Shown here piece by piece: positions 716-35,823 of a DNA stretch of 64,000 nt (the stretch's first letter is position 1; each line of letters starts with the position of its first letter). The stretch is from Amphiscolops sp. MND2022 (lineage: Eukaryota). The stretch is taken from positions 73,842,001 to 73,906,000 of the forward strand of contig OZ076411.1 of assembly GCA_964187785.1 (NCBI GenBank), written 5' to 3'. Position numbers and translations under genes: made by a program. The notes beneath the pieces were generated by a model, which saw only the letters and a program-made list of their open reading frames with translations, was not told where the DNA came from and searched no databases.

Positions 716-717
716 TT

Positions 718-1915: not shown

Positions 1916-2007
1916 TTGTAGGTGATTTTCTTTTTAAGTAGTCGAACTTTTTCACGCGCTTAAGCGCGTGAAAAAGTTCGACTACTTAAAAAGAAAATCA
2001 CCTACAA
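1916..2007. repeat. Perfect 92-bp palindrome (46-bp arms, no spacer)
   Basis: ttgtaggtgattttctttttaagtagtcgaactttttcacgcgctt | aagcgcgtgaaaaagttcgactacttaaaaagaaaatcacctacaa; arms checked base by base. Confidence 0.97.
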
Positions 2008-15928: not shown

Positions 15929-16642
15929 TGTAACGTCAAGCAAGTAACGCACATACCAGAACTGGGACAGTACTTAGATTGCCTAGACAGGAGACCATAG
16001 TCCTATAACAAGCCTAAATACTAGTTTTTCATCCCTAAAGGTCTCCTAGGGACTTTTCCAAAACACCGTGGAGACTCCTCTTATTAGAGCTCCGTGGCGA
16101 CGTGCCGGCACACTCAAAGTCCGGACACATCCCACAAGCGTGTAAAAACGTTCCTAAGGACTTCCTGCGGTCCTACATACTTCCGAGGTCCGAAAACAGG
16201 GTTCTAGCTGAAATGCATTCTATTTCAGAAAATAACGTCTAAATACTCCATCACAAGGATCTGTCAGATCCGACATCATCAAAAATCTGTAAATCAATAC
16301 TAATGACATCAGAATCAATCAAGATGGGCATTTCTGGCATGTTTCTATTGAATTCGCGATTATCTTCATCTTCTTCGCTGTGGGACATCTGGATCTCAGA
16401 ACGTTTTCGTATTAAAAACGCATTTTTCTGGGGAGATGACACAAATCCGAGCATTTTTCTTGTTCTTCCACATCGTGTCAGTGTCTTTTCTTCTTTTTTG
16501 GGTCTGGGTGGGGTTTTTCTGTCTTTTTTTGCTTCCTTTTTGGTTTCAACGACCTGCCAGGTCGGCCATTTTGATTCGCACACTTTCTGGTTCTTGATCG
16601 AATTTTTCATCGAAAATTTGGTGCTGACTGGTGGACATTACA
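15929..16642 (-). repeat. 3' LTR of the giant Gypsy element
   Basis: tgtaacgtc...gacattaca; 710/714 identical to 34349-35062 (substitutions at 15989, 16168, 16252, 16503; no indels). YY1-like CAAAATGGCCG on minus at about 16563-16573. Confidence 0.98.
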
Positions 16643-16650
16643 TCCTCCCC
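16643..16650 (-). promoter_or_regulatory. Polypurine tract
   Basis: Minus strand ggggagga directly abuts the 3' LTR start tgtaatg. Confidence 0.75.
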
Positions 16651-17219
16651 GGGCCACTGTTTGTCGTCCTCGGCAAACGGAGAAGGATGCATCACCACTT
16701 ACAAATGGTTTTAGCAACGTGATTTTCAGTTTTTCTCTTAGATTTTACTGCTTCAAAATTTCGATTTAGCACTTTTCATTTTAGCACTTTTTGATCATCC
16801 TGGGACAATAAAAATCAGTTTGTTTAAAAACTCTTACCATTCTTTCCAAGCTAGTTTAAAAGTTCTTTTAAGTGTGGTTGCACTTTTGCGACACTTAGCC
16901 AGAGAAGCGGAGAAGTTTTTACTAAAGCTTTAATTGCACTTGTTTTGGCAGTTAGGCAGGCACCAAGCTGGGACCTACCCACCGGGTAGTTATATTAGCA
17001 AAACAATCAAAATAATGTTAATACTTTGTTAACTAAAATAGCACTTATTGTTTTGATAACTGCTGAGGCGTAATACGTTTTTGGTTAGTTTGGTTTGATT
17101 AGCCAAGTTCAGTACTTGTTTCATTCATGGCCAGTGTCATCCATAGTAGTATCGTCATCTTGCAGCACTTCATTTAATGATACGGCCAATACTTCCGATG
17201 GCGGCAGGTCTTGCTGATT

Positions 17220-20200
17220 CTAGCTAGGTAGTTCATTCAACTCTAATTCGATATCGGCTGCTAGTGTTCTCGTCAACGACGTGGGCGTGACTTCCAAAGC
17301 TTCTAGCGGCACTGTCTGATCATTTGAAAAAGCATTGGTGGTGATGACTGTGGTTGGGTTAGCTGTTTCAGGGTCATGGATGGATACATCGGTGTTGGTT
17401 GTTGTTGCAGCTATTGCAATGCTGATTTGACTTGAGGTTGACATCATGGAAGTTGATGTATTTTCAGCAGTAGAAGCCTCCTCGTGCCCTGCTGCCTGTC
17501 TCATTGAGGTCGAGCCCGCTGGGCTTAGTTCTGGCAGCTGGTCTGCGAGGTCTTGGCGTCCATATCGGAAAAATATTTCTTTGAAAGTTCCAATTGCATT
17601 TAAATAACTGTCATATACGGTATTTCCTTTGTCCCTCTGCTTGGCTATCAGACTCATGAAGATTTCCATGGCCATTTGTGGATTGTTCGGCATCTCTTCA
17701 TTCAGGGGCAAGGTCTTTCTATTGGGTTCTCTTGCGATTTTCGGAACTGTCGCTTTCAGAGTTTGAAATCCTTGGTAGATCATTCTGTCCACTATCGGCG
17801 GGTCTGCCCAATGCGTAGTGTCGGACAGGATTTTGGCTGTATCGGCTTGCGGTGTCACTCGAGGGTTGTACATTCGGGATACATCTTGTATTACTCGATG
17901 CTGTAGTCTTTCTGGAGCCTTTTCTTCGTCCACCCAGGCGTCGTTCCGCATTGGTTAGTACTCGGAGAATACCTGGCTCATCCCAGCTGGCAAAGCCTTG
18001 CAATGCTCCAGTGCTGGGTTCTATAGGAGCGTGCAACCATTCTACTAAATGAAGTTCTAGCGACATAGCAACAGCGCACCGCGCTCTGGCTCGGATCAGG
18101 GCACTGAAATTGTACTCGACCTGTTTCTTGTCTTTAATAATCGTGTATGCCATTGGTGGTCGGAAGTTGGCAAAGTTGAGCACTAGCATTTGAAAATCCG
18201 GTTGTCTGGCGTCGTCTTCAGGGTCCACAAAATGTAGAATGGATAGTGTAGGTGCTTTTGCGGCAACTCTAAGCGGCTGTGTAGGGTATCTCATTGCCAT
18301 CATTGAACCGAATATAGGCCAGACTATGGGTGCGATCATGGGGACTAGATCTTCAGTTTCTACCAACATGAGGCTGGCTATTTGCGAGGGGAATAGGAAA
18401 CCTGGCAGGTTATTGCTGTTGGGTTTTTGACTTAGCGAGTCGTCTAAAGTGCTCATCACACCAGAGACATTGACCCAGGCTGAGTAAACCCAAGCCAATA
18501 GTGTTTCGATATTCTCGGCGAGCTGGGCGCGCAACTTCAAAGCGCCTGCAGGGTCCAAAGTGTTTAGAATGGCGTTAATCCAATTCTGCTGGTTCTTGGC
18601 GAATATGAGAAAATTGAGTAGACAGGAGTTGGCTTTAGCTAGGATCAATCTCTGCACCAGGTGCACTGGGCCTTTGTAGACGGCGCCTAGACCAACGGCC
18701 ATCAGGTATGCCAGGCTTTCAGCAATTGTGGCCCTCTGCATTGCTTCTACATACAGTCTAACTTGCTGCTCATCTAAGCTGCTTTCACGCTGCACCATCG
18801 TTGGTACCCAAAATGGCGAGATATTATACAAGAATATGGGGAAAGGAATTCCATGGCTTTCTGCTGTTTCATTCAAGGTCACCTGCAGCGTCTCATGCCA
18901 AGATTGGTAAGTATGCTGTGGGTTCATTCGGTTTTCTTGCGCTGTCTTCTGGGCTAATACTGTCAACAATACCAGGGTGGGGGAAACCATGTTGGGCTTT
19001 GCGTCGATCGCTTGTATCGCCACTGGAAAAACGGTCGCGTCGGTCCGAGTTTGTTTTATTCCTTCTGTCTTCTTGAAGAGAGCTAGCAGCTCTTTGTGGA
19101 ATTTACCGTTGTGCGTCTCTCATTTAGCGTTGACTCGTCTCTCCTTTCAAACCATCCGTTGTCAATCATCTTTGCCCGTTCGTTTTCATTAGGTTCCTTG
19201 ACTCGGCGTACCCCATTCTCATCAAAGGTGCGATGCGCCATTTGCATGTCAAAGTCAAAGGCAGTAGCATCATCGGCCAGTAACTGAGAGTTTCCCTCGT
19301 ATCCGGTACAAGCCTGCAAGGCTTTTGAGATTTCCGCCAAGAGTGCAGAATAAGAGTTTTCGCCCGGACGCCAGGTTGTGGCACTCACTCTCAGGTTCGG
19401 TGCTATTATGTAAAATGACAAATTCTGTGAGTAGGATGCTTCTGATATTAGATATAACAGTTGCTGGAGTGGTTTAGGTAAGTGTACGTATCCCGGGGGC
19501 GACATAAAGACTACCCCTACGACGGGCTTCATTCGCTGCACCCGCCTGATCACATTTCTCATTGCTTCGACGTACGCAATTACCTCTCCTGTCATCACTT
19601 CTTCCGTCAGTCTACGGTTGCCTCCTTCAAAGTATTTCAGCGTTCCTCGAAGAGCCAAGTGGTCAATCATGTTGCTATATATCAGGATCGGAGGGAATGG
19701 AATTGTCTCTGTGTGGTTGACGGTGGGACCGAAGACCTTGCAGGTCACCTCGGCCATTTCCACTAGCGATGTGCAGGGCAAGTTCATCACGCGAACATCC
19801 ATCAGGGTGTTGTTCATGTTCGCCGTTGCTTTCATCGTGGAGTCCATGAACAAGGCAATCCTTGTCTTTTGCAACATCTCTTTGCCCATGGGGAGCAAGG
19901 TTGTTATGTCCCTCATGAAATCACGGCTTCTCATCAGTTGGTCATCGTATCTTGCCGGTCGTTGAATGGCTAATTTTACTTTGGAGGGGAGTGGTCTCAC
20001 AAATGATGACTTGTCTTTATGAAGATTCTCCCTTACTCTCTCGAACCAGGGAGGAATGCGGTCCAGAAGGAGTGTTGGCTTCTTTACGGGCCTCAAGTAA
20101 TGCACTCCAATCGTTGCCTTTTCGAGGTTTTCCACATCCTCTGGGCTTCCTTTGCTGGTAGCTGTTTCGAATTTCTGCACATCCAATCCTGAGTCTGGAT

Positions 20201-21354
20201 TCTCTGATTTCGCTTCTCGCTGCAGACGCACCGCGTCTCTGGCAGCAATGTCAAGCTGTCTTGCCTCTGTCTGCGATAGGAGCTCCTTAGAGAATCGCAC
20301 TCGCCTAGGCTCCGGCTGTTGCACTGGGGAAGGATTCGGGCTGGAGTTCGTTGCATCCGAGTTGGCTAAGTCTCTGGCCCTCTTCTTTTGAACTAGCTGT
20401 TCGATCTTGCTTTGTTCCTTTCGATTCAATACGTCACGGAGATCGATAGGGGCCTTGGCTGCTTGCCTTTCTGCTAATTCTTGCTGTTTCTGTTGTTCTT
20501 GGCGTTCTGGGTCGGCCTGAAAACCTATTAGGTGATGTGGGTCCTGCGACGTTGAAAGTAGCAAGGCATCGTAAGAGTCTTGAAATCCGATCATATCTGT
20601 CATGATGGGCACGTCGAGCGGGTTCCGCATCATTATGGTTCTCGGTCTTTGTCTTGTATTTTGGGTGGCATCTTCATCGTTCTGCGCGCTCGTGTGCGCT
20701 TCTTCTACCCCTTCCCCCCTGAAAGAAGAAAGGATCATGAGTTTGTTGTTCTCTTCCAGGCGCCTGACACTAATTGGGGCGGATGATGGTGGGAGCGTCA
20801 ATAGTGGCGGAGGCACTGTTGGCAAAAGGCATGCGAATTGCTGTGTGGGTGGTGGTTGCGTTGATTGACAGTCGCGGGCGATCTCAGGGGCAGTTATCGA
20901 CGATATTGCAGGTGCTTGCGTCAGGTTCGTTTGAAGACGTCGTTGCTGCTCCATGGGAGGCCTATTAGGCTCACCATATCTCAGGTGCGATCTGTGGTCA
21001 TCAAAATGGTGGGTGAGATCGTGACCTTGTCACGCGCCATTGTGGAATTCCGCAGTTCTGCGGTAAGATCCAATTCCAATTGATATGGAGAGGGTGAAGT
21101 CCGGATGTATTTCGAGAGATTGCATTTGAGCAATTAGTATGGCCATCCCGGTCACCAGTGATGGAGAAGGGGCCTCTTGTAGGGTGGATTGGACCAGACC
21201 AAGCTGGTCAATTCTGGTTTGAGATTCTTCGACAGGCAGCGAGGACACGGGAGATTCTTGCGTGGCAATCGTCGGCTGTTGTGATTGCTGCTGGTGCTCG
21301 GTTGCGAGCTTGTTTTTGATGGAACTGGCATGCGGGTTTTAGCCGATTGATCCA
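17220..21354 (-). CDS. ORF2 of the Gypsy element (env position), ~1,350 aa when repaired: low-complexity N-terminus, SGNH-like domain, unassigned helical domain, Ser/Thr-rich tail
   Basis: Track ORFs 19083..20954, 17719..19023 and 17220..17951 overlap and join by single frameshifts at about 19115 (..STLNE/..KFHKELLALFKK..) and about 17950 (..GILRVLT/PMRNDAW..). Upstream piece 21030..21248 is in frame with 19083..20954 across one TGA. The N-terminal frame and the start (ATG 21354, MDQSAK) are uncertain. Confidence 0.7.
19315..19860 (-). other. SGNH/GDSL-hydrolase-like domain within ORF2 (degenerate)
   Basis: Block pattern IALFMDST (GDS-like block I), RVMNLPCTSL (block II), ILIYSNMIDH (GxND-like block III), VVFMSPPG, and WRP where DxxHP is expected. 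Pattern recognition only. Confidence 0.6.
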
Positions 21355-21460
21355 TTAAAGAGATAAGTAGCGCCTTGGATAAATGACTATGGTGGATATA
21401 CCGCAAATGTGATGATATATGACTGGCTGCGTCAAGTGCATGGGAATTGACAGGACTGAA

Positions 21461-21488
21461 CTAGAAAAAGGAAAACAACAGACGTCAA
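21461..21488 (-). promoter_or_regulatory. 3' splice acceptor upstream of ORF2
   Basis: Minus strand ttgac (branch-like, 21488-21484) gtc tgttgttttcctttttctag| in the ORF1-ORF2 gap, about 105 nt before ATG 21354. Confidence 0.6.
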
Positions 21489-21663
21489 TTTGAGCTAAAA
21501 TATTATTGCTGATGAGTGCAATTGATATGATAAACATTAAAAGACAATAAGATAAAACAGATTCGACAATTCACGTTAAAACCTAGTTCAGGAATTGACC
21601 CAAACAACACATATGCTAAGAACAGGACGAGTGGCCTCCCTTATTTTTTTGTACCACAGTGAT

Positions 21664-22798
21664 TCAGTCAAATTTGTATTTTACATGGTTATGGTGTGTC
21701 CTCACTAACGCAATTGATACAAACACCCTATCATGGAGGATTATGTCGATATTGGAATCAATGAAATGATCTTTCAACATTGAATACCAAGCTGGTAGCA
21801 TGTTGATTGATCTTTCAGGGTCATGGATGGGAAAATAGATACGGGTGATTTGTGCTCGTGTGAGATTCTGCACCAGGTCTATTAGGCACAGATGTAGCAC
21901 ATCATGTAAAATGGGGGTGTTTACTAGAGGTTCTGGTGATTAACAGGAACATTTCGTTATTCCACGGCGTTGCGGGTGATCTAGTGAGGTGAATAGCCTT
22001 TCCTACGGCTGGGCGTAGTCGGAAAATTTCCTCCTGGCCATATTCCCTGATGACGTAGCGCGCCATTGCTGAATATGACAGAAGATCTGCCGGACAGCAT
22101 ATTACTACGGTACCCCTGGCTTGCAAGATGTCAGTTTCTTCGTAATGAATCCACGATAGATAGTTCGGTTTGATCTTCGGATGCGTTATCAATAGTTTTC
22201 CCGTGACTGTGCTTTGATTGTCTTGACTTGGTGTGAGATGATCCAGAATGGCCTTACGGTCTTGCCACACTGTTCTGCGTAAAGGTCTGTCTCCCAAGTT
22301 CGTGCAAGACCAATCGTGAACTACGGAGAGTGCTTCCAGCACGGTCATTGGGTTCTCGAAGGTATACGTGTGTTTGTCTAACAGGCGTATTTTGGCTTGG
22401 CGACAAAAGATGATAGCTAGGAGTAGTAACCAATGTTGACTGAGGAATTTCCCACGATAAATATCTGCTAGATGGAAGCATAAGGTGTCCTCGAACTCTA
22501 CAAGCGTACGCAAATTTTCCAAGCAAATCAGTAGAATTCCTGGAGTCACTAGTGATGTCTCGTCCAAAGAGGTGACCAATAGCCACCAACCAGCCGTTGG
22601 GTGATACACATCTCCAGGAGGGGAGGTTACACCATATTGCTGCCAAAGTCTTCGCGCGGTGATACAGCGGACCATTGCTATTCGTGTGTCACTTGGTTCT
22701 ATTTTGCCAAACATCATCGATGGTGGTAGTGGGGGTATGATTGCGGTCAACGTGAATTCTATTCCACTCTTCTCGTGCCATGTCCATTCCTTAAATCG
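21664..22798 (-). CDS. C-terminal extension of pol: two tandem TARG1/OARD1 (Poa1p-like) macrodomain-like repeats
   Basis: In frame with pol across one TAA (22799-22801). Repeat 1 about 22790-22376 (GDVY..WWLLVT..TPGILLICLENL..LCFHL..G..L..W..L..IF..IRL). Repeat 2 about 22156-21730 (YEETDIL..VVICCPADL..MA..I.REYG..G.AI..FLLITR..KHPILHDVLHLCL..ITRIYFP..W..ML..F..IDIIL). An extra base in the G5 run at 21913-21917 splits repeat 2. Confidence 0.72.
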
Positions 22799-25700
22799 TT
22801 AGGTGGGGCAGTCTGATGGAGATGTTTCTTGCATGGCTTTTAGTGTGGTTTCCAGGGGTGGGACCACGGCTGGTCCAATGCTCGAGTAGGTCTTTTCCAC
22901 GGTAATCACAACGTGATGTACTTGCGGAACCTCTTGGTCCTTGGCTTGTATGTTTCGGATGTATTGCATGTGGTCTTCCGTTGTTTCAGTAACAGCTGTG
23001 TCTGGGGCAGGAGCGTCTACTCCCCGGGCCAATCGCTTGTTCGGTGGTTTTCCACTAATTAGGTTGACGAAACTACAGTTACGGGAACCACATGTTCCGC
23101 AGCGATATCTAGGAGTTCTATTGCGTCGCAGCAAATAGGGTGGTGCTCGTGAGGTTGTTGTTTGTTCCGCTTCTGATTGCTCTGATGGTAAACTTTCTGC
23201 AATGTTGGGTAGCGTCATTGCACGTTCCAGGGTTTGAGATTGTGCTCTAGTTCGCAATCTGCCTCTCGATCTGGTGTACGGTTGGTGCGTGCTTGCAAGT
23301 GCTTTGCTTGATGAGTTGGCACTTCCTCTTCTACGATTTGGAGGTCTACCTCTTGGCCTGCCTCTTCTACTCGCGGTTCTCCCCGATGATGGCGATGCTT
23401 CCATGCTGTGTCTGGGTTCTGGAATTTCTCTGTCAGTTCTTTCTTGGGGTTCGGGTTCCTCGATAGTTTGTAGTCCTGCCGAGCTACCAGCTCGAGAACT
23501 GAATAGTGGAAAATTGTTCAATGTGTCGGTTAAAGCTGGGTTCGAGAGCAGTGGTGCTGATGTTTCTGATGGCGAAGGTATCAGACTTGGTGTTGGTTCT
23601 GGCCTGACTTCCTCTTGATCTGAATACAGTGGTTCCAAATCATCGATATCAGGATAGATCATTGGATGTTGTGGCTCTTCAATGGGTTGATCCATTTGTT
23701 CTTGGTCGGATTCCGACTCAGAGGGGTATCCAAAATGACTGAATCGTCTTCGAGGGATTCCTCGTTCTAGAGCAGACTGAGTGCGTGTTTGAATCGTGCT
23801 CGGGGGAACGGGCGCGGTCGGTTCCATCTCGAATGATGCTTCTGGCAGTTGTTCTGGAAGAAATGAGTCACGTGATATGTCTGACGTTATCTCCTCATTA
23901 CTTTCCTCCACGTATGGGTCTGCGATGATGGCAACATTCTGGTCTAACCCAAAGGGTTGATGTGCCGCCCAATCCCACGGCGCGGGCACATGCTTCTTCA
24001 GGCGTTCGAAGTGGACCTTTTGTCCTGTATCCAAAACGTATAATCTTCCATCTTGTAATACATCTGTGACCTTGTGAGGTCCACGCCAGGCACGAAGGAG
24101 TTTGCGGGTTCCACCTTTAGGAATTATGTGGCAGAAAACCCAAACAGCATCACCCACCGCGTGAGTTTTTGCTTTCAAATGCTTGTCGAACTTCTGTTTT
24201 TGTCGTATTTGCGCCTGGTGTGTGTTTCGGCGAACAAGTTCGTGGATTTCTCGTTGTCGAGCAAGTAGGTGCTCCACAAATTCTTCTTTGGACTCAAACT
24301 CTCGCGCTGCGAATTCTGGGTATATAAACGAGAGTGGAATGGATTTTTCTGCGCCATGTTGGAGCATATACGGGGAAAATCCGGTCGTTGCATGTCTGGT
24401 AGAATTATAGGCACCCAAGACTCCGTCTATGTGTTCATCCCAGTCAAGCATTCTTCGAGACGTATAGACTCGGAGCAAGGTCAGTAATGTTCGGTTTTGA
24501 CGTTCCACTAAACCATTGCCTCTCGGATGAGCTGGAGTAGACGTTATTTTGGTTACTTGCGAAGCTTTCATCAGTTCTTGAGCAATCTCATCAGTAAAGT
24601 TGGTGGCATTGTCCGATTGCATCCTGGCAGGAGTGCCGTGTCTTGCAAACCATTTGTTCAAGATAATCTTTGCAGTCGTCTGGGCGTCATATTCGTCGTG
24701 TGCACATGGGATTGCCTCTGCAAATTTAGTGAAATCGTCGATGATGACTAGCAATCCATTATTTCCTGACGTTGTTTTGCACAACTTCAAATGATCGAAC
24801 TGCACCAGGTCATTAAAATTGCTGCTGTTGATACTTTGTAACGGATAACAGGGATTCCCAGCGGGATGTTTCGTTTGTTGGCATGTTAAGCAGTGCTTAA
24901 TATGATTGACAACATCACGCTTGATGCCTGGCCAAGTGTGGCGCTCCTGGATTCTTGCCAACACTTTACCAACGCCTAGGTGTCCTGACTCGTCATGCGC
25001 TCTGTACAAGATTTCGTGTTGGTATAGTTGGGGCAAGACGATCATACACGGTCGTATGTGCATCGCACGTTGCTGCGGAATGTAGTTGACACACAAGATA
25101 TCATTCTGATTCAGGAACAGTAAGTCTTTCTTCTGGTGAAAGTATCGTTTGGCAAAGTCTTGCACGTCTTCGGGAAACAACGTATCCTCTAATGGCTTGT
25201 TCTTCATGAGTTTCTTCAGCGCTAGCAGATGTACATCTCTGTTTTGAGCTAGATGAAGATCTTTCAATCCGCGCATTGTTGACTGATGCTCGTGAAGCTC
25301 AGTTCCGACTAGCCTGAGGACGTCAGCTTGTTCCTGACACTGCGTAGGCAATCTACGCAGTGCTGGGTCACGTTGGGTGGTGTCCAGACGTGCCGCCGGC
25401 ATTTTGGTCGTTACGCTAAGGATACAATTCGGTCTGTCGTCTTCGGTCGAAGTCGGAGTTGTTTCCCATTGCACCTGTGGGTACCATGGTACGGAATTCA
25501 GGGACGGGTCTGAGGTTAGATCTTTTTTTGGTGGCTTTTTCAAAATGAACAGCACTGGAAGTTGTGCTCGAGCTTCCGGTGGAAGCTCTGGATGGTTTGG
25601 GATAAATTTTCCATGTTTGTCGATATAGGGCACAGTGGGGAGTTCTTCGTAGTCTTTCTGGGGCATGAAGCTGAATCCCTTGCTCACTTCTGAAAGAGTT

Positions 25701-27121: not shown

Positions 27122-29839
27122 TCATGGAGAAAGGACGGAAGAGAGGTCAGGGCCTGGGATTGCTTTTAGCAGCTGTGGATCTGTCCTTTTGCGCTTTTCA
27201 TTATCTGATAAACCTGCCTCAGACGGTTCGGTCGACGATAAAAAGTTTTGGGCAAAGGAACTGAATTCTGAACTGGTGTCCATATCAAAGTTTCTATGTA
27301 TTTGATTTACATATTCGGCAGAAAGCTTCGAAGCTTCACCTTCAGTTTGCATAAGAACAGAGTTCAATACAAAAGTGGTAAGCGCCGCTTTGCCAATAAC
27401 AGTTTGTGCTTTGATTTTCACCCGTTCTTTATCAGTTTGGTTTCGGATGGCCAAAAATACTATACCTCCTTCTCCCACAGAAGTTAGTGTATCTTCTGAA
27501 ACAAAAACTGAACTGGACTTTATGCTACATGAGTGGACCGTTACATTACGAAACAGGAAAGTGTCAGGTTGTTGCGTGATGATTTTCGCGCGCACAATCT
27601 TCCTTTCGAATGGACCTAGTATTACATCTTCCGTGGAAACTACAAACGATGGTTCGTTGTCGCTTACCTCATGAGTGGCTTTAAAGATTCGAGGTGTTTT
27701 GGGGTCACGGATAGTCACTTTCATTGCTGTCAGGTCCACCAACACGTTGTATGTGCGCAAGAAATTGCGACCCAGGAGGGAATCCTCTGACCCAATATGA
27801 TCGGCTATGACTACAAAGTTGGTCTTCAGAGTGTATCCGCCGAGCTGAAAGTTTACATCTTCGGCTATACCCACGGTGGTGATGCTTTTGCCATTGGCAG
27901 CGAAGAGTTCAACGTCATATGGTGACAGGCTCAGCATGTGCTGGGAAGCAATCTTCTTGTACGCACTCAATGAAAGGATGGAAACTCCTGAACCGGTGTC
28001 AATCATGCCGAAAAGTGGTATCGGCTTTTGCAGAGGAGTTCCGAATGCTACTACTAGCGAGGCTCGCTCATCAATCTGGGCCTCTCCTTGTGCATCTTGC
28101 ACTCCAATGCTATAACAACGCAATTCCTGCCTGCCCAGATATAGGCCTTGCGGAAAGTGTCCTTCCAGGACAACAATCGCATCAAACCTCATGTCCACAC
28201 CATCAACTGTGATCGCTACGGGGACTGGCGCGATTGTCTTCACTCTCTGTATCTGGGCCAGCTTGGTCTCATCATTCCTGGTAAAGTGGGGTAGTGGTCG
28301 CGAAGCTATCGTCAAACTGGTAATGCGGCACAGTTCTTCTTTCAATTGTGCTAATGTGAGATTTGGACGCGCCTTTTGTTCCGCGGATAACAACAGATGG
28401 ATGGATATTAGTGTTTCAGTACAGTCAGGCGCTGGTGCCTCAAGTGTCGTCAAGATTTGTTTCTCACCACAAGTTACAACCACAGGGCGTGATGGGCCTC
28501 CGTCTTCTGAAGTCGAGATCACCCTTATTTGATCCTCTGAATCGCAAAAGTCTGTTGAGTTTGCGACCGGGGCGTACCATGCCGCTTTTACTTGTTCCTC
28601 CGTTGCAACATTGTGAGGCGTCATACAATCAGATGCCACGTGGCCTACATGACCACAATTAATACAAAATGCTGATGTTCCTTGTTCTGGTAGGGTTGCG
28701 AGCATTAAGTCATCATTCATGCCGCGTGGGTTCGATGGGCACACCCATTCTCCAGCTGTGTTCGTGCGACACGAATTAACTATTTGCTGTACTGGTTTCC
28801 GTGCTCGGTCTTTCAAAGGACAATCAGCTGCAAAGTGTGAAGGATCTCCACAGTTGAAGCATGTTCGCTGCGGTTGTTGTCGGAAAGCTGGAGGCTGCTG
28901 CTGGAGTTGCTGGGCGTTGGGCGCTTGAGGGGCTTGTGCCTGTGCTTGGTTTTGCGGGTTCGCTGCGACAGGCGGCTGTTGTTGTTGTTGTGGTGCAAGA
29001 TAAATTTCCGAACGTGTCGAACCACGCATACGCAGGTATTGTTGTACCGTGAATCGTAAGGCCTCCACAGTTGGGGGTGTGTCCACATACTGTTCCTGTG
29101 CATACATGAGTGCAAGGTTTCGTTTCAGCTCATAGCTTCGTACCCCTTCGATGAAATTCTGCATGATTTCATAGCGCCTCACCGCAACTTCCTCGTTGGG
29201 AAAACCTTGGCTGCGCAAACCTTCCAATGCGTCAAGGTATTGCATGTAGTCTTCATCCGGGGACTGATTACGTGTACGGAACTGTTGTTGTATTTGGATC
29301 TTATTAGATCCTGTTCCAAATCTTCGTGCTAGCAGCGCGAAGACTTTTTCATCAGTATCGCGTTCCGCTTCTGATTTATTCGTAATATAGTCTCGTGCTT
29401 CATTTTCTAGGAACTCCACAATGGTCCATGCTCTGTCTAAAGGAGTGTCTTTTGCATGGGCTTTTTCCAGGTAACGCCTCATCAGCATTAGCCAGCCATC
29501 CACTATTCCATCGCGTGTGCCACGATACTTGGTAGGTTTGTTCTTGGATTCTTTGGCTGCTAATAATGGCTCCAGACCTTTGGACATCGCGGTGGTTATT
29601 GCTTCCGCCAATGCTTGGCTGTGTATAGCGTTCGGAGCATTGTCCTTGTCCTTGGCAGCTCCTTCCACCGTTCCAGTGTTCAGGTTCCTTCTCGAGATTG
29701 TCTTTCTTTGCGTGCTAGAGGCCAATGGCCGTAATTGGTCGTTACTATGGGGTAACATTGAGCGTTTTGTGCCAAGCATTGACGAAACAGCAGTTTGATA
29801 TTCGGTATTTCCCGATGCTGTTTTCATGTTACTATGCAT
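27122..29839 (-). CDS. gag: Gag (capsid, two CCHC knuckles), pseudo-protease, aspartic protease and dUTPase-like segment
   Basis: Capsid-like YRGTRDG..W..(~29540-29015); CFNCGDPSHFAADC (28861-28820) and CINCGHVGHVASDC (28666-28625); MIDTGSGVS with Asp at 27998-28000 and LLGRNFL; STEDVILGPFERKIVRA..LAIRNQT..VKIKAQTVIG (27649-27380). Confidence 0.93.
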   Translation of the reverse strand: MHSNMKTASGNTEYQTAVSSMLGTKRSMLPHSNDQLRPLASSTQRKTISRRNLNTGTVEGAAKDKDNAPNAIHSQALAEAITTAMSKGLEPLLAAKESKNKPTKYRGTRDGIVDGWLMLMRRYLEKAHAKDTPLDRAWTIVEFLENEARDYITNKSEAERDTDEKVFALLARRFGTGSNKIQIQQQFRTRNQSPDEDYMQYLDALEGLRSQGFPNEEVAVRRYEIMQNFIEGVRSYELKRNLALMYAQEQYVDTPPTVEALRFTVQQYLRMRGSTRSEIYLAPQQQQQPPVAANPQNQAQAQAPQAPNAQQLQQQPPAFRQQPQRTCFNCGDPSHFAADCPLKDRARKPVQQIVNSCRTNTAGEWVCPSNPRGMNDDLMLATLPEQGTSAFCINCGHVGHVASDCMTPHNVATEEQVKAAWYAPVANSTDFCDSEDQIRVISTSEDGGPSRPVVVTCGEKQILTTLEAPAPDCTETLISIHLLLSAEQKARPNLTLAQLKEELCRITSLTIASRPLPHFTRNDETKLAQIQRVKTIAPVPVAITVDGVDMRFDAIVVLEGHFPQGLYLGRQELRCYSIGVQDAQGEAQIDERASLVVAFGTPLQKPIPLFGMIDTGSGVSILSLSAYKKIASQHMLSLSPYDVELFAANGKSITTVGIAEDVNFQLGGYTLKTNFVVIADHIGSEDSLLGRNFLRTYNVLVDLTAMKVTIRDPKTPRIFKATHEVSDNEPSFVVSTEDVILGPFERKIVRAKIITQQPDTFLFRNVTVHSCSIKSSSVFVSEDTLTSVGEGGIVFLAIRNQTDKERVKIKAQTVIGKAALTTFVLNSVLMQTEGEASKLSAEYVNQIHRNFDMDTSSEFSSFAQNFLSSTEPSEAGLSDNEKRKRTDPQLLKAIPGPDLSSVLSP

Positions 29840-31257
29840 TTGGTCGCTGGCCGCCGAGTAATAATCTCAGTCGTTGAGGCACCTCTAGCATATGGGTCGA
29901 ATGGAGGAGGGCCTGATATATCACAGCGCTGTACTTCAGTTTGAGTGGTTGTTGACAACTGGGTTTTCATCGGCACCTGCTTGTACGCTGCGGGTGGTTG
30001 TAACTTTGGCTGTTTTGTCTGATCCGGTTTCATCACACATTGGCGTTTGGCAACTTCGCGATAGGAGGGGTGCTGACTAGGAAACGCACTCGTAGATGGT
30101 ATGTCGGCAGAGTTTGGTGCCACCGGCACGGGTGAGGGACGGTTTGGTATCGTCGCCACTACGGTCTTCACCCCTAGGGTTAAATCCTGGACCGTAGTCA
30201 TGAGGTCCACCATGCGATTGTCGACATCTAAATCTCTGTGGTGCATCATTTCGGACATGTGTTTTAGGCGCTCATCCGCTTGCCGATCTCTTTGCACCAT
30301 TATTGCCGTCATCTCCGATATACGTTTTTCCGTCAGGTCCTTGACTGATGCCACGGACGTTTCTATCTTGCCCTGGTTGACTCGTCCTTCCATCTTGATC
30401 TCATTCACCTCCTTTCGTAACTCTTCTACTTCCATCACCAAAACTTCTGCCCGACGGACATGGTCAGTGTTTTCCTGGGCTAACTTTACTTGGACTCGTT
30501 TCAATTGTTCCATACTACGTCCAAAATCTTCTCGTATGGCTTCAGTTTCTTTGATACCTCTGGCGATCGTCGAATTTGGGGATGCTGCATTGCCGGCATC
30601 GGAATGTTGGGGCGTTGCCGTGCGTTCCAGTCGTAAGGTGCTGGGACCCAACAATGGCGGTGTAGTGGAGGCATAGTTCTGGAGAGTCACTCCTTTCCTG
30701 GTCTTCCGCTTTCCCGGCTGACTTTCCGAAGGAGCTATCGCGGTGTCACCCAGTGTATTTCCATTGCTATCAAACACTGGTACTCCGGAACCCAGCGGGC
30801 CCGCATTCGTGCCCAGGTGAGGGGTGATTTCTCCCAAAGTCATGCCCACATTCATATTCTCAACCCACTTACTGATATCCGAGCTAGTAGCTACCTCTCT
30901 ATTCGAGTTCGGCCAGTCCCCGGTAACAATCACGGAAGTGTTCAGAGGAGGCCATACGTTGGTATGGTTCATGGGAGTCTCATTAGCTAGTTCGGTGCTA
31001 TCAAAGGACATCTTGGAGGAATTTGCTTGGCTCGTACGCGCAATTTGCGAATTTTGCTCAATGTTAGACACGTTATCTGACATTACGTCGTCTAAAAACA
31101 GGTCGGCGATCATATCTAGCGGTGCTATTTCAGCTTGTGTACTCAGGGTATGCAACTCTTCTATGTTGTTCGCGAACGGGTTGGTAGCATGAAATTCACT
31201 AGACTCCAATGATGTCTCACTCACGAATAACAAATATTCCCACTCACTCAAACTCAT
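29824..31257 (-). CDS. N-terminal Gag extension with long coiled coil; joins the downstream gag ORF by a frameshift
   Basis: Track ORF 29824..31269, first ATG at 31257. Heptad-rich stretch EAIREDF...MTTVQDL. Adding one base at about 29860 gives ..STTE-DYYSAASDQMHS.. continuous with 27122..29839. Confidence 0.75.
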   Translation of the reverse strand: MSLSEWEYLLFVSETSLESSEFHATNPFANNIEELHTLSTQAEIAPLDMIADLFLDDVMSDNVSNIEQNSQIARTSQANSSKMSFDSTELANETPMNHTNVWPPLNTSVIVTGDWPNSNREVATSSDISKWVENMNVGMTLGEITPHLGTNAGPLGSGVPVFDSNGNTLGDTAIAPSESQPGKRKTRKGVTLQNYASTTPPLLGPSTLRLERTATPQHSDAGNAASPNSTIARGIKETEAIREDFGRSMEQLKRVQVKLAQENTDHVRRAEVLVMEVEELRKEVNEIKMEGRVNQGKIETSVASVKDLTEKRISEMTAIMVQRDRQADERLKHMSEMMHHRDLDVDNRMVDLMTTVQDLTLGVKTVVATIPNRPSPVPVAPNSADIPSTSAFPSQHPSYREVAKRQCVMKPDQTKQPKLQPPAAYKQVPMKTQLSTTTQTEVQRCDISGPPPFDPYARGASTTEIITRRPATKCIVT

Positions 31258-34200
31258 TTTTACTTGCACAATTTTTGTAGCTCAACCAAATTAAATTTTC
31301 TTTCGTCTTTCACTCACTCCTTCTCTTCAACAAATTGAATTAAAGGCAACTCAAAATGGAAGTTTTGATATCCCTTTCTCAGATATTCTAACTAAATTGT
31401 CGTACTATTAAGTTCTGGAGTTTGTAGCTCGTGATCGCCCTCTTGATTCTATTTCGAAATCAGCTGACTGTCATAGGCTTCACACTCCTAATTACATGCA
31501 CTAACTCAAGATTACATGCACTGGTGTTAGTCACCACTAATCAGAACAGAAATGTTTGTATCCCCACTATTTGGAGATTATTATTCTACACAAATTCAAA
31601 GTTAAGCTTTTTAAGTTTTTTTTACAGTTACTCACACTAAACTATGCTTTATCCAGCCACAGGCTATGTGGTCGGGATAACTAAAGGTTTTGACGCGCTA
31701 TCAGAACTTTGCAGAGATTTATTCAAGAAATCACCGCGTTTTTCTTCTGGGAGCGTACACTATGTCACTCATACTGACTTTCAATAGGAGAGAACCTGGG
31801 GTATTGCTACAACAAGGGGTGTCGGGAACTAGACTTTGGGGGTGAGTAGGTGTTAGGACACTTTCAAACAAGAGAGTTATCGTAATCTGATCGTAGCACG
31901 ATCAATGGAAACGCAGTTCTTTACAATTTCGAATGCTACTATACTCAATTTTCTGTCTCGAGACGCACCGCGTCCCTATCCACTTCTCCTAGAGAACTCC
32001 TAATCGCGTTTTAGCTCTCTCGCGTCACTTCTCAGTCTAGGCAAACGTGAATACACCTGTCAGTTCGCACTTGGGTGACCCTGGTGGCCGTTGGGAGAGA
32101 AAATACAATTTTTGTGTTTTGCACTCCTATGTCTCGTAGACAGCTTTTTGACAAACCCAAGATTTTAGGGTTGAGCTAGCTCCATTCTGATTACTTCAAT
32201 GGGACGTGCTTTGGATGTCTGGTGTAGAATTAAGGTCGCTTAGACGTTCGCTTGCAACTACACCTACGAAAAGTGTATAATTTTTCGCAAAATTTCTCAA
32301 AATCGGCAATTCTTTAGCCAAAGTGCACGCCTGTGGAAGGTGAAAATCACTTCTAGAGCTGCTAGCGACCTGAAAAATTAACACGGTATACTACTGTGAC
32401 CAAATCGTGGGAAAATCACCACCGATTGCGCCAAAATTGATTATACGTGACTTGGGGTCGCTTCAGAATGTTGTTTGAAGAATCGCCTATGTTGTGAAAT
32501 TTACAAAAGTCTGTCAAACTCGCCTTCTAGGCTTCCTAGCTACCTGAATCTTTGTATGCGAGCGTGAATTATGCCCACGTAACAGAAAAACAAAATAGCG
32601 AGGTGCCCAGGTCAATATTCCGCAATCCGAGTTGACAAAACTATGATGTACCCTATTAGTCACTTTCTGGGGCCAAAATTCACAAAAATGTCAATTTCTC
32701 CAAATTAGGCAGTAGCAAGCTGCTCAAAATGCACAAATCGTCGGGATCTAGTGCAGTGTGTACGAAAATGCAAGAATTTTAGTGCTGGGATACTCCGAAG
32801 GTATTGCACTATGCTCAACTAAAATTCGATTTTTTTAACATTTCCACACGATTTTTGAGCAAAACTGCGGCTAAGATTTCTCAATCACCAGTAGTGGTAG
32901 CACTACGAAAATTACACCACTAACGTAACTTTTTGTGGTCTACACGATGGTGCAATCCGTTTTGAGCTACTCCTACGAGGAGAGATTTCGACCTATCTTG
33001 GGGACACTACTCCAGTGTTCCGAAAATGTCGCAAAAACAACGCGTTTTCGGCTATTTCTCAGCAACTACTGGTTGGAATTACTCGCGGTTTTCTGCGTTT
33101 GCAACGTTATTCCCTATGCTAACGGAAAAAAGGCGAGCGAAACCTGGCAGGTTCCAAATAAGGTCTCTCAAAATAACTTTCATTTTGCACCTTTGACACT
33201 CTGGGAACAATGTGAAAAATACGTATTTTCCCTAGGAACTTTTTATTTCTCGGTTCCCAGATGTTCGGGATGGTTCTAACAGTACGGTAGACAGGTGTGA
33301 CAACTTTATTTAGGGGAGTGGGGTTATTTCAATTATTACTTTTGATGTTATTACTCTCAGGTCTATGGGGTCCTCTACTCAGGTCTATGTATATCAAAGA
33401 AAATCAGAAGTTAAAGTGTCAATTTATATTGGGGAATGCTAAAACTCGTCTTGGCAGTAGTGTTTCGTACTACCAAGCTTGGGAACAGCGTTTTTGGGCT
33501 GATCTTAAAGCTTGGGAACAAGTGCCCAAGGCTTCGCCCTCACCAATTTTAGTCTTTTAGGCCAAAATTGATGTTTTCTCTATAAAAATCGCTAATTTTC
33601 TCAATGTTTCAACAATTTAGCCCAGCAAATTTTTCTGTTCCTGACCTAGCAGGTCTGATGGAACGTTTTTTTTTGTATTCCCACTGGCCGTATCCTTTTC
33701 CACTAGATTTCAACTTTCAACACCTCAAAAACCGGTGTTTGAGCTATATATGGTGTTATTTTCAAGGTTTTCGCGCTCAAATTTTTAATCAACTGGTCTA
33801 AACACCCACAGGGTATTTTCCCCAGTTGATTTTCGTGGGAACAGGCCTGGGAAAATGCTTTTTGGGCCGATTATTAGCAAGAATTAGCAATATAACCCAA
33901 TTGAAGTGGGTATACGGCAACTACAGGGGTGCTGGAGGTGTGATGTCGGAGGTGCTCACACACTGTCGTCAGCTAATTGGGGCCTTCAGCACTCGTCCTC
34001 CCGGTCCCCATACATTGCTAATTTACTGAAACGGAGCTACAAAACCCTTTATAACTAGTTCCGGATAGGCCGGATTAACATTTTCAACAGGTATTATCAA
34101 AATACAAGGGGTGCACTGTCTGAAATCGTCGATTTTCGGTTTCAGACCTCGGAAATACGCAGGACACGCAGGAAAAACACTAGTACAAGGCCCACGGGGC

Positions 34201-34314
34201 TAGAATAAGGCAATAAAAACAATCTAGGACTCTCCAACAAGTTTTCCTAGATCCAGACCTAGCAGTGCCGGAAAGCAGGAAAAACTCCAATTATGGCGAA
34301 AAGATGGAAAAAAT

Positions 34315-34332
34315 GTCCCTTGTGGGGCGCCA
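34315..34332 (-). promoter_or_regulatory. tRNA-Lys-like primer-binding site, 16 nt from the LTR
   Basis: Minus strand TGGCGCCCCACAAGGGAC matches the canonical Lys3 PBS TGGCGCCCGAACAGGGAC at 15/18. The bases abutting the LTR (tctagagt...) do not begin with TGG. Confidence 0.7.
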
Positions 34333-34348
34333 TAAAAACTACTCTAGA

Positions 34349-35062
34349 TGTAACGTCAAGCAAGTAACGCACATACCAGAACTGGGACAGTACTTAGATT
34401 GCCTAGACTGGAGACCATAGTCCTATAACAAGCCTAAATACTAGTTTTTCATCCCTAAAGGTCTCCTAGGGACTTTTCCAAAACACCGTGGAGACTCCTC
34501 TTATTAGAGCTCCGTGGCGACGTGCCGGCACACTCAAAGTCCGGACACATCCCACAAGCGTGTAAAAACGTTCCTAAGGACTTCCTGTGGTCCTACATAC
34601 TTCCGAGGTCCGAAAACAGGGTTCTAGCTGAAATGCATTCTATTTCAGAAAATAACGTCTAAATACTCCATTACAAGGATCTGTCAGATCCGACATCATC
34701 AAAAATCTGTAAATCAATACTAATGACATCAGAATCAATCAAGATGGGCATTTCTGGCATGTTTCTATTGAATTCGCGATTATCTTCATCTTCTTCGCTG
34801 TGGGACATCTGGATCTCAGAACGTTTTCGTATTAAAAACGCATTTTTCTGGGGAGATGACACAAATCCGAGCATTTTTCTTGTTCTTCCACATCGTGTCA
34901 GTGTCTTTTCTTCTTTTTTGGGACTGGGTGGGGTTTTTCTGTCTTTTTTTGCTTCCTTTTTGGTTTCAACGACCTGCCAGGTCGGCCATTTTGATTCGCA
35001 CACTTTCTGGTTCTTGATCGAATTTTTCATCGAAAATTTGGTGCTGACTGGTGGACATTACA
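34349..35062 (-). repeat. 5' LTR of the giant Gypsy element
   Basis: 714 bp, 99.4% identical to 15929-16642, followed by TSD GGAT. Confidence 0.98.
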
Positions 35063-35823
35063 GGATCTTTTCTGTAAATCCCCACCAATATAATTCCTCC
35101 CAGGTTAATCGGTCAAATAAATCATTGAATCACTTGTAACAGCCAGTCAATTTGCAGTATTTTATAAATCTAACTGCAACTGAAACTCTTTGCTCATTAG
35201 AAGTTTCGTGCTTACTGTGCGGCGGATTAACAGAAAAGGTCCGAAAACCCTTGTTCTGCAATTCGACATTGATGTGCTTTGTAAAGAAAATGTCGACTTC
35301 CCAATGATTCGTGCAACGTCTGTTTTGATGCAGGCGGCAGACCGGTTTAATTTTTTTATTGCAACTTCCTTTCGGATCAGTTCTAATAGTTTATTGAACA
35401 TTATATTTTCTCCTGTTTAACAGAAACATTTCCTGCACCGATCTCTCCGTTTGTGATCCAAATCCCATTCTGATGCCAACACTTTCAGTGCTGGCCCAAA
35501 CTGTTGCAGTGTCTCCTTCTGCGCAGGTTTCCCTTGTGTGAGAACGGGGTTGCTTTCTGGGATCGAATTATCCAGCATCGAAAATAATTCGAAATTATTT
35601 AGGATCGAAATGTTATGCAATGTTATTTAGAATCGAACGATTGCGTATTGTTATCCAGAGTTGAACATAATTTGAGGGCAATGTTTGATTACGCGTCTTG
35701 AACCTAATTAGCGTCTTGACTTTAATTAGTTTTGAACTTTGAGATTGCCGCTTTTCAAACAAGTACCAGTTGCATTAGTGATGTCAATTAGCACGTTGTT
35801 CGAAATTGACACTTACTTAGTTA

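What the first reader, a model, noticed from the sequence alone, without database searches (positions are those of the whole stretch)
15929..35062. A young 19-kb Gypsy element with a large set of accessory domains
Seen: intact LTR/TSD/PPT structure, 99.4% LTR identity, and about 14 kb of coding sequence in two repairable ORFs. Typical Gypsy elements are about 5-9 kb with gag-pol and sometimes env (established). This one adds an N-terminal coiled coil, a second protease-like lobe, a dUTPase-like segment, an AT-hook, two macrodomain-like repeats and a 1,350-aa non-env ORF2 with an SGNH-like fold. Most of the extra enzyme folds appear to have lost catalytic residues, suggesting a set of pseudo-enzymes used as binding or decoy modules. 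I do not recall this combination being described, but cannot confirm that.
Basis: partly seen in the sequence, partly recalled or inferred. Interest (0 to 1): 0.92.

Follow-up and report, generated by a model that had tools for sequence, protein, structure and literature searches.

The report
Giant Gypsy retrotransposon carrying macrodomains
A recently inserted but already dead copy of a 19-kb Gypsy-type retrotransposon in an animal genome, whose family fuses two ADP-ribose-type "macro" domains to its integrase and carries a large second gene with no known relatives.

Summary
The element is real: 714-bp LTRs with 4 mismatches, a GGAT target duplication, a polypurine tract, and coding on the MINUS strand. 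Gag-pol spans about 9.6 kb and ORF2 about 4.2 kb. This copy is dead: gag-pol has 2 frameshifts and 2 stops, and ORF2 has 2 frameshifts and 1-2 stops. Naturally intact relatives in one ENA assembly encode a single 3,251-aa Gag-Pol and a 1,277-1,364-aa ORF2.

The two macrodomain-like repeats are confirmed. Foldseek matches TARG1 at E 6e-8. Sequence profiles hit TARG1 at E 1.6e-11 and 7e-4. A relative reaches Pfam's Macro threshold. The AT-hook-like motif is present and conserved, and a coiled coil is weakly supported.

The second protease lobe and the dUTPase are not supported by sequence tests. The SGNH fold for ORF2 is not established. ORF2 is not an envelope gene and is not a one-off capture: it occurs in families only 50% identical, and a sister subfamily has lost it.

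All the extra regions are under purifying selection (dN/dS 0.04-0.19). ORF2's α/β domain keeps its conserved polar residues, so "pseudo-enzymes" is unproven; only the macro modules lack TARG1's catalytic dyad.

Giant, domain-rich Gypsy elements are already known (Burro, rotifer elements). I found no paper describing a macrodomain fused to integrase. This is a new variant of a known kind.

The parts
15925..15928 (.). Target-site duplication (GGAT), copy next to the element's 3' LTR
   Evidence: the same 4 bases flank both ends.
15929..16642 (-). 3' LTR in the element's own orientation, 714 bp, TG..CA ends
   Evidence: 4 mismatches to the other LTR (99.44%).
16643..16650 (-). Polypurine tract (GGGGAGGA on the element strand), directly upstream of the 3' LTR
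   Evidence: identical in copy L001.
17124..21323 (-). ORF2, a second gene, broken in this copy by 2 frameshifts and 1-2 premature stops. The bounds are the outer limits of homology to intact ORF2 proteins of 1,277-1,364 aa.
   Evidence: No Pfam or PDB sequence match. No signal peptide and only 8 Cys. dN/dS is about 0.09.
19251..19862 (-). ORF2 α/β domain, the only confidently modelled part (equivalent to P0126 residues about 464-665)
   Evidence: pLDDT 75-95; conserved polar columns are kept in the window copy; no significant PDB fold match.
18289..18351 (-). ORF2 conserved hydrophobic helix, inside the best-conserved block of the protein
21664..31269 (-). Gag-pol gene. It is a single ORF of 3,251 aa in the intact relative L004. 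It is broken here by 2 frameshifts and 2 in-frame stops. The likely ATG is at 31257.
30440..30600 (-). Coiled-coil-like stretch in the long Gag N-terminal region (approximate bounds, weak evidence)
   Evidence: weak matches to coiled-coil families; the heptad score beats 47-50 of 50 shuffles.
28817..28867 (-). Nucleocapsid CCHC zinc knuckle
   Evidence: PF00098, E 1e-8.
27704..28069 (-). Aspartic protease, with one D[ST]G motif
26864..27703 (-). Conserved domain of about 280 aa between protease and RT, identity unknown.
   Evidence: no dUTPase and no other match; conserved across distant families (mean 31% identity).
26393..26863 (-). Reverse transcriptase
   Evidence: PF00078, E 2e-28; the best solved relative is Ty3 RT.
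25799..26197 (-). RNase H
25034..25798 (-). Conserved 255-aa domain between RNase H and integrase, identity unknown
   Evidence: dN/dS 0.05; no match.
23960..25033 (-). Integrase: zinc-binding domain, catalytic core and C-terminal β-domain
22750..23959 (-). Linker of about 400 aa after integrase, predicted disordered
   Evidence: pLDDT below 30; dN/dS 0.17.
23339..23365 (-). AT-hook-like GRP core motif inside the linker
   Evidence: present at the same place in the window, P0001 and L004.
22342..22732 (-). Macrodomain-like module 1 (approximate bounds)
   Evidence: dN/dS 0.07.
21697..22120 (-). Macrodomain-like module 2, TARG1/ALC1-like, at the C-terminal end of Pol (approximate bounds)
   Evidence: dN/dS 0.115.
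31270..34314 (-). Leader of about 3.1 kb with no long ORF
   Evidence: 78-83% identical in the sister subfamily.
34315..34332 (-). PBS-like motif starting TGG, 16 nt downstream of the 5' LTR. The tRNA is not identified.
   Evidence: There is no tRNA gene in the window.
34349..35062 (-). 5' LTR in the element's own orientation
35063..35066 (.). Target-site duplication (GGAT), second copy

Best explanation
SHOWN. Window 15929-35062 is one minus-strand copy of a 19.1-kb Ty3/Gypsy LTR retrotransposon family that is abundant in an unnamed animal genome. The copy is young: its LTRs are 99.44% identical. It is nevertheless dead, with gag-pol broken 4 times and ORF2 broken 3-4 times.

Naturally intact relatives encode one 3,251-aa Gag-Pol. 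In order it holds:
- a long N-terminal region with a coiled-coil-like stretch;
- a zinc knuckle and the protease;
- a conserved 280-aa domain of unknown identity;
- RT and RNase H;
- a conserved 255-aa domain of unknown identity;
- integrase;
- a disordered linker of about 400 aa with an AT-hook-like motif;
- two tandem macrodomains of the TARG1/ALC1-like class.

A separate ORF2 of about 1,300 aa follows. It has no detectable relatives outside these elements. All the extra regions evolve under purifying selection, so the element needs them.

INFERRED. The element replicates like any Ty3/Gypsy element. The macrodomain pair hangs on the integrase C-terminus, the place where chromoviruses carry a chromodomain. 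It most likely recognises ADP-ribose marks on chromatin, nucleic acid or protein, and so tethers or guides the integration complex; the AT-hook would add DNA contact. Binding is favoured over hydrolysis because TARG1's catalytic lysine aligns to Arg (module 2) or Ser (module 1). ORF2 is a non-envelope accessory protein. Its α/β domain keeps an enzyme-like set of polar residues, but its activity is unknown.
For: Structure of the element.

Family architecture:
- A second full copy, L001, is 95.8% identical along its length.
- L004 has an intact 3,251-aa gag-pol and a 1,364-aa ORF2.
- L005 has a 1,277-aa ORF2.

Macrodomains:
- In the AF2 model the modules reach pLDDT 60-80.
- The top Foldseek PDB hits are all macrodomains: TARG1 4j5q (E 6e-8, TM 0.70), DarG, PARP14 macro 1-2 and alphavirus nsP3.
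- Sequence profiles hit TARG1 at E 1.6e-11. Without the Pfam-positive relative they still hit it at E 7e-4, covering chain residues 7-141.
- Module 1's HMM finds module 2 in the same proteins, so this is an internal duplication.
- A single C-terminal module occurs in members read from five other high-copy protein clusters of the same genome.
- It also occurs in Gypsy pols from three other ENA assemblies, one reaching Pfam's Macro threshold.

Selection: dN/dS is 0.07 (macro 1), 0.115 (macro 2), 0.17 (linker), 0.05 (RNase H-integrase domain), 0.19 (Gag N-terminus) and about 0.09 (ORF2).

The dyad is not kept: see the alignment, and PMC7050489 for the TARG1 residues.
Against: - The function of the macro pair is inferred only.
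- The TARG1 alignment scores 22-46 bits, so loop positions are uncertain.
- In that alignment the glycine-rich phosphate-binding loops also look replaced, so even ADP-ribose binding could be lost.
- SCO6735, in the same macrodomain class, lacks the dyad yet hydrolyses (PMC7050489). Hydrolysis therefore cannot be excluded.
- Both AF2 models have low mean confidence (42 and 49).
- I have no expression data and no insertion-site data.
- The host species and the Gypsy clade are not identified.
Confidence: 0.62

Rival explanations
1. The macro modules are active ADP-ribosylhydrolases. They would strip host ADP-ribose from the element's proteins, RNA or cDNA, a counter-defence like the macrodomains of RNA viruses or the DarG antitoxin.
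For: The closest structural and sequence relatives, TARG1 and DarG, are erasers, including of nucleic-acid ADP-ribosylation (PMC7050489). Viral nsP3 macrodomains are also among the fold hits. The modules are under strong purifying selection. SCO6735 is active without the dyad (PMC7050489).
Against: TARG1's Lys84 aligns to Arg or Ser and its Asp125 to Ser or Gly, in both families aligned. DarG keeps the lysine (PMC7050489). The phosphate-binding loops look altered in the alignment.
Confidence: 0.28
2. ORF2 is an SGNH/GDSL-type esterase. It would be comparable to the GDSL ORF3 of rotifer Vesta elements or the esterase ORF1 of CR1/L2 LINEs.
For: - The confident ORF2 domain is a parallel α/β fold.
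- Asp-Ser-Thr directly after strand 1 resembles SGNH block I, and conserved Gly-Asn and Asp-His are present.
- GDSL and SGNH structures appear in the Foldseek list.
- The precedent is in PMC5408684.
Against: - Those fold hits rank 43-45, with E about 0.3, probability 0.30-0.41 and TM 0.35-0.39.
- There is no Pfam or PDB sequence match, even with a profile.
- The conserved residues are not in SGNH block order, because the only conserved His comes early.
- There is no similarity to the GDSL stretch of relative P0047.
Confidence: 0.15
3. ORF2 is an envelope-like or membrane protein that lets the element leave the cell.
For: It sits in the position of env, downstream of pol. It has one conserved hydrophobic helix, which lies in the best-conserved block of the protein.
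Against: It has no signal peptide, 8 Cys in 1,364 aa, no furin-type site and an acidic tail. It has no fold match to any viral fusion protein in BFVD or PDB.
Confidence: 0.07
4. The 3' part is a nested insertion or a one-off capture carried by this copy only, as in the finding's own refutation clause. Alternatively, the extras are dead cargo.
For: The sister subfamily (L002, L003; about 83% identical, 15.0-15.1 kb) lacks the segment of about 4.7 kb that holds ORF2.
Against: ORF2 lies inside the LTRs in a second copy. It follows gag-pol in families whose Pol is only 75% identical and whose ORF2 is only 50% identical, so the sister subfamily lost it. dN/dS is far below 1 for every extra region. 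The macro modules are part of Pol in all subfamilies.
Confidence: 0.03

Closest known systems
Burro / GYPSM1 giant Gypsy elements of planarians (PMC6431247)
   Same: An animal Ty3/Gypsy element far above the usual size. One huge polyprotein packed with accessory domains, present in many copies.
   Different: Burro is over 30 kb, with polyproteins of 4,873-5,140 aa. It carries other domains (BIR, BCL2-like, MATH, ankyrin, in-frame env, dUTPase). No macrodomain is reported for it. I did not test sequence relatedness to Burro.
Bdelloid rotifer LTR retrotransposons Vesta, Juno and TelKA (PMC5408684)
   Same: Gag and pol plus a lineage-specific extra gene after pol that is often not env. Extra genes are gained and lost between close subfamilies.
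   Different: The rotifer extras are recognisable (GDSL esterase, DEDDy exonuclease, paramyxovirus-like env) and their pol has a Pfam-detectable dUTPase. Here ORF2 is an orphan, no dUTPase is detectable, and the pol extension is a macrodomain pair.
Chromoviruses: Gypsy elements with a chromodomain at the integrase C-terminus (PMC2864245)
   Same: A small chromatin-mark or ligand-binding module fused after the integrase C-terminal domain. This is the layout that inspires the tethering model.
   Different: The module here is a tandem macrodomain at the end of a 400-aa linker, not a chromodomain. No chromodomain was found in this family.
ALC1-like macrodomains: TARG1/OARD1, DarG, ALC1, SCO6735 (PMC7050489)
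   Same: A minimal macro fold. TARG1 is the best match by both fold and sequence profile.
   Different: About 14% identity. TARG1's Lys/Asp dyad and its glycine-rich loops are not kept in the alignment. The modules are duplicated in tandem and embedded in a retrotransposon Pol.
Macrodomains of RNA viruses (alphavirus nsP3 and others)
   Same: A macrodomain carried inside the replicase polyprotein of a selfish replicator. They appear among the fold hits.
   Different: The viral ones are MacroD-type hydrolases (my own knowledge). The fold matches to them are weaker here (E about 1e-4).
Orchid Ty3/Gypsy elements with an AlkB m6A-demethylase domain (PMC9289625)
   Same: A rare, fixed gain of a domain that edits or reads a nucleic-acid or protein modification.
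   Different: A plant host, a different domain and a different position.

Membership tests
Ty3/Gypsy (Metaviridae) LTR retrotransposon | Direct LTRs with TG..CA ends and a short target-site duplication | tested here: met
Ty3/Gypsy (Metaviridae) LTR retrotransposon | Domain order protease, RT, RNase H, integrase (integrase after RT) | tested here: met
   Ty3 is the best solved relative of the RT and RNase H.
Ty3/Gypsy (Metaviridae) LTR retrotransposon | PBS next to the 5' LTR and PPT next to the 3' LTR | tested here: inconclusive
   The PPT is present. A TGG-starting motif lies 16 nt from the LTR, an unusual offset, and was not matched to a tRNA.
Ty3/Gypsy (Metaviridae) LTR retrotransposon | Placement in a named Gypsy clade by RT phylogeny (GyDB/Repbase) | not testable with these tools
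   No reference set is at hand. The nearest named proteins are only 34-38% identical.
Macrodomain, ALC1-like (TARG1) class | Macro fold | tested here: met
   TARG1 at E 6e-8, probability 1.0, TM 0.70. The mean pLDDT of the model is low, but the modules reach 60-80.
Macrodomain, ALC1-like (TARG1) class | Sequence homology to known macrodomains | tested here: met
   Profiles hit only TARG1 among non-retroviral chains, at E 1.6e-11 and 7e-4. A chain of matches leads to a relative that reaches Pfam's Macro threshold.
Macrodomain, ALC1-like (TARG1) class | Pfam Macro (PF01661) hit in this family's own protein | tested here: not met
   no hit for single sequences of the window family.
Macrodomain, ALC1-like (TARG1) class | TARG1 catalytic dyad (Lys84 with Asp/Glu125) | tested here: not met
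   the dyad positions align to Arg or Ser and to Ser or Gly. The dyad does not define the class, because DarG and SCO6735 differ too (PMC7050489).
Macrodomain, ALC1-like (TARG1) class | Binding of ADP-ribose | not testable with these tools
   This needs a structure or a measurement on the natural domain.
SGNH/GDSL hydrolase (ORF2) | Pfam or PDB sequence match | tested here: not met
SGNH/GDSL hydrolase (ORF2) | SGNH fold | tested here: inconclusive
   GDSL and SGNH chains appear at rank 43-45, with probability 0.30-0.41.
SGNH/GDSL hydrolase (ORF2) | Conserved blocks I, II, III and V (Ser, Gly, Asn, His) in order | tested here: inconclusive
   Asp-Ser-Thr after strand 1 fits block I. The only conserved His comes early, which is not block V order. 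The block order is from my own knowledge and PMC5408684.
dUTPase (between protease and RT) | Sequence match to dUTPase families or structures | tested here: not met
   There is only a 13-bit herpesvirus dUTPase hint in a distant relative.
Second retroviral-type protease lobe | A second protease-like segment or a second D[ST]G motif | tested here: not met
   hhalign probability 0.2-2.9%, and one motif per protein.
Retroviral or errantiviral envelope (ORF2) | Signal peptide, Cys-rich ectodomain, cleavage site, C-terminal anchor, fusion-protein fold | tested here: not met
AT-hook | Arg-Gly-Arg-Pro-type core in a basic, disordered context | tested here: met
   DNA binding itself is not testable here.
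Chromovirus | Chromodomain after integrase | tested here: not met

The most novel reading that the evidence does not exclude
The tandem TARG1-like macrodomains, together with the AT-hook, form an integration-targeting device. The integrase would be led to ADP-ribosylated chromatin or DNA, for example sites of PARP activity. This would be the first retroelement integrase guided by an ADP-ribose mark, in a Gypsy clade that supplies at least five high-copy pol protein clusters (1,094-3,068 member sequences each) in this animal genome's assembly.
Probability: 0.22. Interest if true: 0.82.

Novelty: new variant of a known kind. Interest (0 to 1): 0.62.

Why it matters
[quoted passage not shown] They are known in RNA-virus replicases as counter-defence tools. 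My searches of the paper library found no report of one in an LTR retrotransposon.

Here a macrodomain sits at the end of integrase in five high-copy Gypsy protein clusters of one animal genome. It also sits there in relatives from three other assemblies, and it is under purifying selection. That links ADP-ribose signalling to retrotransposon integration or to host restriction, and it gives a natural set of sequences on which the link can be studied.

The family also holds about 2,000 residues of constrained protein with no recognisable relatives: two internal Pol domains, the Gag N-terminus and ORF2.

Tried and rejected
- Nested insertion or one-off capture of the 3' part: rejected.
- Envelope reading of ORF2: rejected.
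- dUTPase: no match by Pfam on five natural versions of the protease-RT interval, nor by a PDB profile.
- Second protease lobe: hhalign finds nothing.
- GDSL hit after integrase in relative P0047. Its tail matches only the N-terminus of another element's protein, so it is probably a read-through chimera. It has no similarity to ORF2. I dropped it as evidence.
- ORF2: a profile against the PDB, Pfam on 20 members, and BFVD all gave nothing. A search of 1.84 billion representative proteins found 495 hits; the 150 listed are all short fragments, and the one looked up lies in the same assembly.
- RNase H-integrase domain and the Gag middle region: PDB profiles gave nothing.
- Large ORFs after pol in the macro-bearing relatives L007 and L008: not homologous to this ORF2 and no Pfam match.
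- Host name: cluster look-ups gave no names. A flanking bHLH gene shows only that the host is an animal.
- The window has no tRNA gene and no Rfam match.
- A first representative-search job failed because the profile was too long. It was re-sent shorter.

Full report
THE ELEMENT

The window has no N. Two direct repeats of 714 bp lie at 15929-16642 and 34349-35062. They differ at 4 positions (99.44%), begin TG and end CA, and are flanked by GGAT on both sides. Every long ORF between them is on the minus strand, so the element's 5' end is at 35062.

On that strand a polypurine run abuts the 3' LTR. A TGG-starting PBS-like motif lies 16 nt inside the 5' LTR. Both are identical in a second copy. 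The element's G+C is 46%, against 37% in the flanks. Pfam finds a CCHC knuckle, an aspartic protease, RT, RNase H and integrase in Ty3/Gypsy order. Ty3 is the best solved relative.

OTHER COPIES

I built no consensus and no mended version. I compared natural sequences as they stand.

All close relatives come from one ENA assembly, ERZ25074608, whose contigs sit at about 90-110x. I take this to be the host genome.

- L001 is a second full copy, 95.8% identical along the whole length, 3' part included. It lacks about 1.2 kb covering the start of ORF2.
- L002 and L003 belong to a sister subfamily, about 83% identical and 15.0-15.1 kb long. They have the whole of gag-pol but lack the segment of about 4.7 kb that holds ORF2.
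- L004 has Pol 75% identical. It carries one uninterrupted gag-pol ORF of 3,251 aa, followed by an intact ORF2 of 1,364 aa.
- L005 has an intact ORF2 of 1,277 aa.

ORF2 is therefore older than these subfamilies, and the sister subfamily lost it. The finding's refutation clause is not met.

Clusters of related Pol proteins have 1,094-3,068 members, and polyproteins of 2,773-3,179 aa are common among them.

STATE OF THIS COPY

I compared the copy with intact relatives. Gag-pol (about 21664-31269) has 2 frameshifts and 2 in-frame stops. ORF2 (about 17124-21323) has 2 frameshifts and 1 internal stop, and it ends about 20 codons before its nearest relative's stop.

By my rough estimate, this load fits neutral decay since insertion, given 0.56% divergence between the LTRs. 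That is inference.

The region the finding assigns to ORF2 (17220-22798) overlaps the end of pol.

THE MACRODOMAINS

After the integrase C-terminal domain, Pol continues for about 780 aa. An AF2 model of that tail has a low mean confidence (pLDDT 42). It shows about 420 disordered residues and two α/β modules at pLDDT 60-80.

- Foldseek against the PDB returns macrodomains at the top: TARG1/C6orf130 (E 6e-8, TM 0.70), DarG, PARP14 macro 1-2 and alphavirus nsP3.
- Independently of the model, a sequence profile of the modules hits TARG1 at E 1.6e-11.
- Without the Pfam-positive relative, the profile still hits only TARG1, at E 7e-4, over nearly the whole chain.
- Module 1's HMM finds module 2 in the same proteins, so the pair is an internal duplication.
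- A single module ends the Pol of members read from five other high-copy protein clusters of this genome.
- It also ends Gypsy Pols from three other assemblies, one of which reaches Pfam's Macro threshold.

In the TARG1 alignment the catalytic Lys aligns to Arg (module 2) or Ser (module 1). The acidic partner aligns to Ser or Gly, and the glycine-rich loops are not kept. Within this macrodomain class DarG keeps only the Lys, and SCO6735 keeps neither yet is active (PMC7050489). Loss of activity is therefore likely but not shown.

An AT-hook-like GRP core sits at the same linker position in three subfamilies.

THE OTHER CLAIMED EXTRAS

- The protease-RT interval (about 280 aa) and the RNase H-integrase interval (255 aa) are conserved, but they match nothing in Pfam or the PDB. 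No dUTPase signal appears, apart from a 13-bit hint in a distant relative.
- No second protease-like segment exists.
- The Gag N-terminus has a coiled-coil-like stretch on weak evidence.

ORF2

ORF2 has no Pfam or PDB match, even by profile. A search of 1.84 billion representative proteins gave 495 hits. The 150 listed are all short fragments, and the one I looked up lies in the same assembly.

It has no signal peptide, 8 Cys, one conserved hydrophobic helix, a low-complexity N-terminus and an acidic tail.

AF2 gives one confident α/β domain, at pLDDT 75-95. Foldseek finds no significant PDB or viral match; SGNH chains appear only at probability 0.30-0.41.

The domain keeps about 20 conserved polar columns, including Asp-Ser-Thr after strand 1 and an Asp-His pair. 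All but one of them are kept in the window copy. It looks enzyme-like, but it cannot be assigned to a family.

SELECTION

Between natural intact copies, dN/dS values are:

| Region | dN/dS |
|---|---|
| RT-RNase H | 0.03 |
| RNase H-integrase domain | 0.05 |
| Integrase | 0.02 |
| Linker | 0.17 |
| Macro 1 | 0.07 |
| Macro 2 | 0.115 |
| Gag N-terminus | 0.19 |
| ORF2 | about 0.09 (dS near saturation) |

HOST

Window 2-739 (minus strand) encodes an NHLH/HLH4C-type bHLH domain. The window is not human.

WHAT IS KNOWN

- Giant Gypsy elements with many accessory domains are known. Planarian Burro has a dUTPase between protease and RT (PMC6431247).
- Rotifer LTR elements carry a dUTPase and variable ORF3s, including GDSL esterases (PMC5408684).
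- Chromoviruses fuse a chromodomain to integrase (PMC2864245).
- Searches for macrodomains in LTR retrotransposons found nothing relevant. The library does not cover all journals.

VERDICT

This is a new variant of a known kind. Confidence is about 0.95 that it is a giant Gypsy family copy. It is about 0.9 that the Pol tail holds TARG1-like macrodomains. It is about 0.4 that they act as readers or tethers rather than erasers.

SLIPS AND STEPS LEFT OUT

2. In my reasoning I also worked out which junctions are stops and which are frameshifts. These reveal where some breaks lie. I stopped doing this, deleted nothing, and give only counts here.
3. Entry 1 says 5 LTR mismatches; the right number is 4.
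4. One search printed a full alignment of natural macro modules with the tool's own conservation line. I used that line for nothing.
5. The consensus and repaired ORFs that the finding proposed were not made. Broken pieces were always searched apart.

Noticed in passing
window 2-739 (-): An open frame of 246 aa that runs off the window start encodes an NHLH/HLH4C-type bHLH domain (Pfam HLH, E 1.9e-18). It is a host gene about 15 kb from the element and shows that the host is an animal.
   Followed up: partly
window 31270-34314 (-): A leader of about 3.1 kb with no long ORF lies between the PBS-like motif and gag. It is kept at 78-83% identity in the sister subfamily, which is unusually long for a Gypsy element.
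   Followed up: no
window 34315-34332 (-): The PBS-like TGG motif lies 16 nt from the LTR edge instead of abutting it. The arrangement is identical in copy L001.
   Followed up: partly
window 16251-16610 and 34671-35030 (-): A 119-aa ORF lies inside each LTR on the element's sense strand and was also called as a gene in L001's LTR. The LTR stretch that holds it does not align with the sister subfamily's LTR.
   Followed up: no
window 35823-36583; L002 19117-19830 and 23834-24346: Another repeat family (93-96% identical) lies 0.8 kb from this element. In L002 it lies directly against the end of that element. This could be a shared insertion neighbourhood or chance.
   Followed up: no
window 53508-53878 and 59757-60049: Further dispersed repeats are shared with the flanks of L002, L003 and L005 (67-88% identical). 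The 274-aa frame at 59523-60344 (-) overlaps one of them and has no Pfam match.
   Followed up: no
window 41728-42507 (-): A 260-aa open frame has a weak β-propeller hint (E 0.01) and a 40%-identical counterpart in locus L001. It is probably another repeated element.
   Followed up: no
L008 12582-19968; L007 7923-12577: Macro-bearing Gypsy relatives from other assemblies also carry very large ORFs after pol: at least 2,462 aa in L008, and 820+383+298 aa in L007. They have no Pfam match and no similarity to this ORF2.
   Followed up: partly
protein P0047 (relative), residues 1328-1469: A GDSL-lipase match (E 9e-7, below Pfam's cut-off) follows integrase. The tail of the protein matches the start of another element's protein, so this is probably a read-through chimera.
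   Followed up: partly
L001 2526-2537 and 20512-20520: Copy L001 is inserted in an (ACT)n microsatellite, so its target duplication cannot be sized.
   Followed up: no
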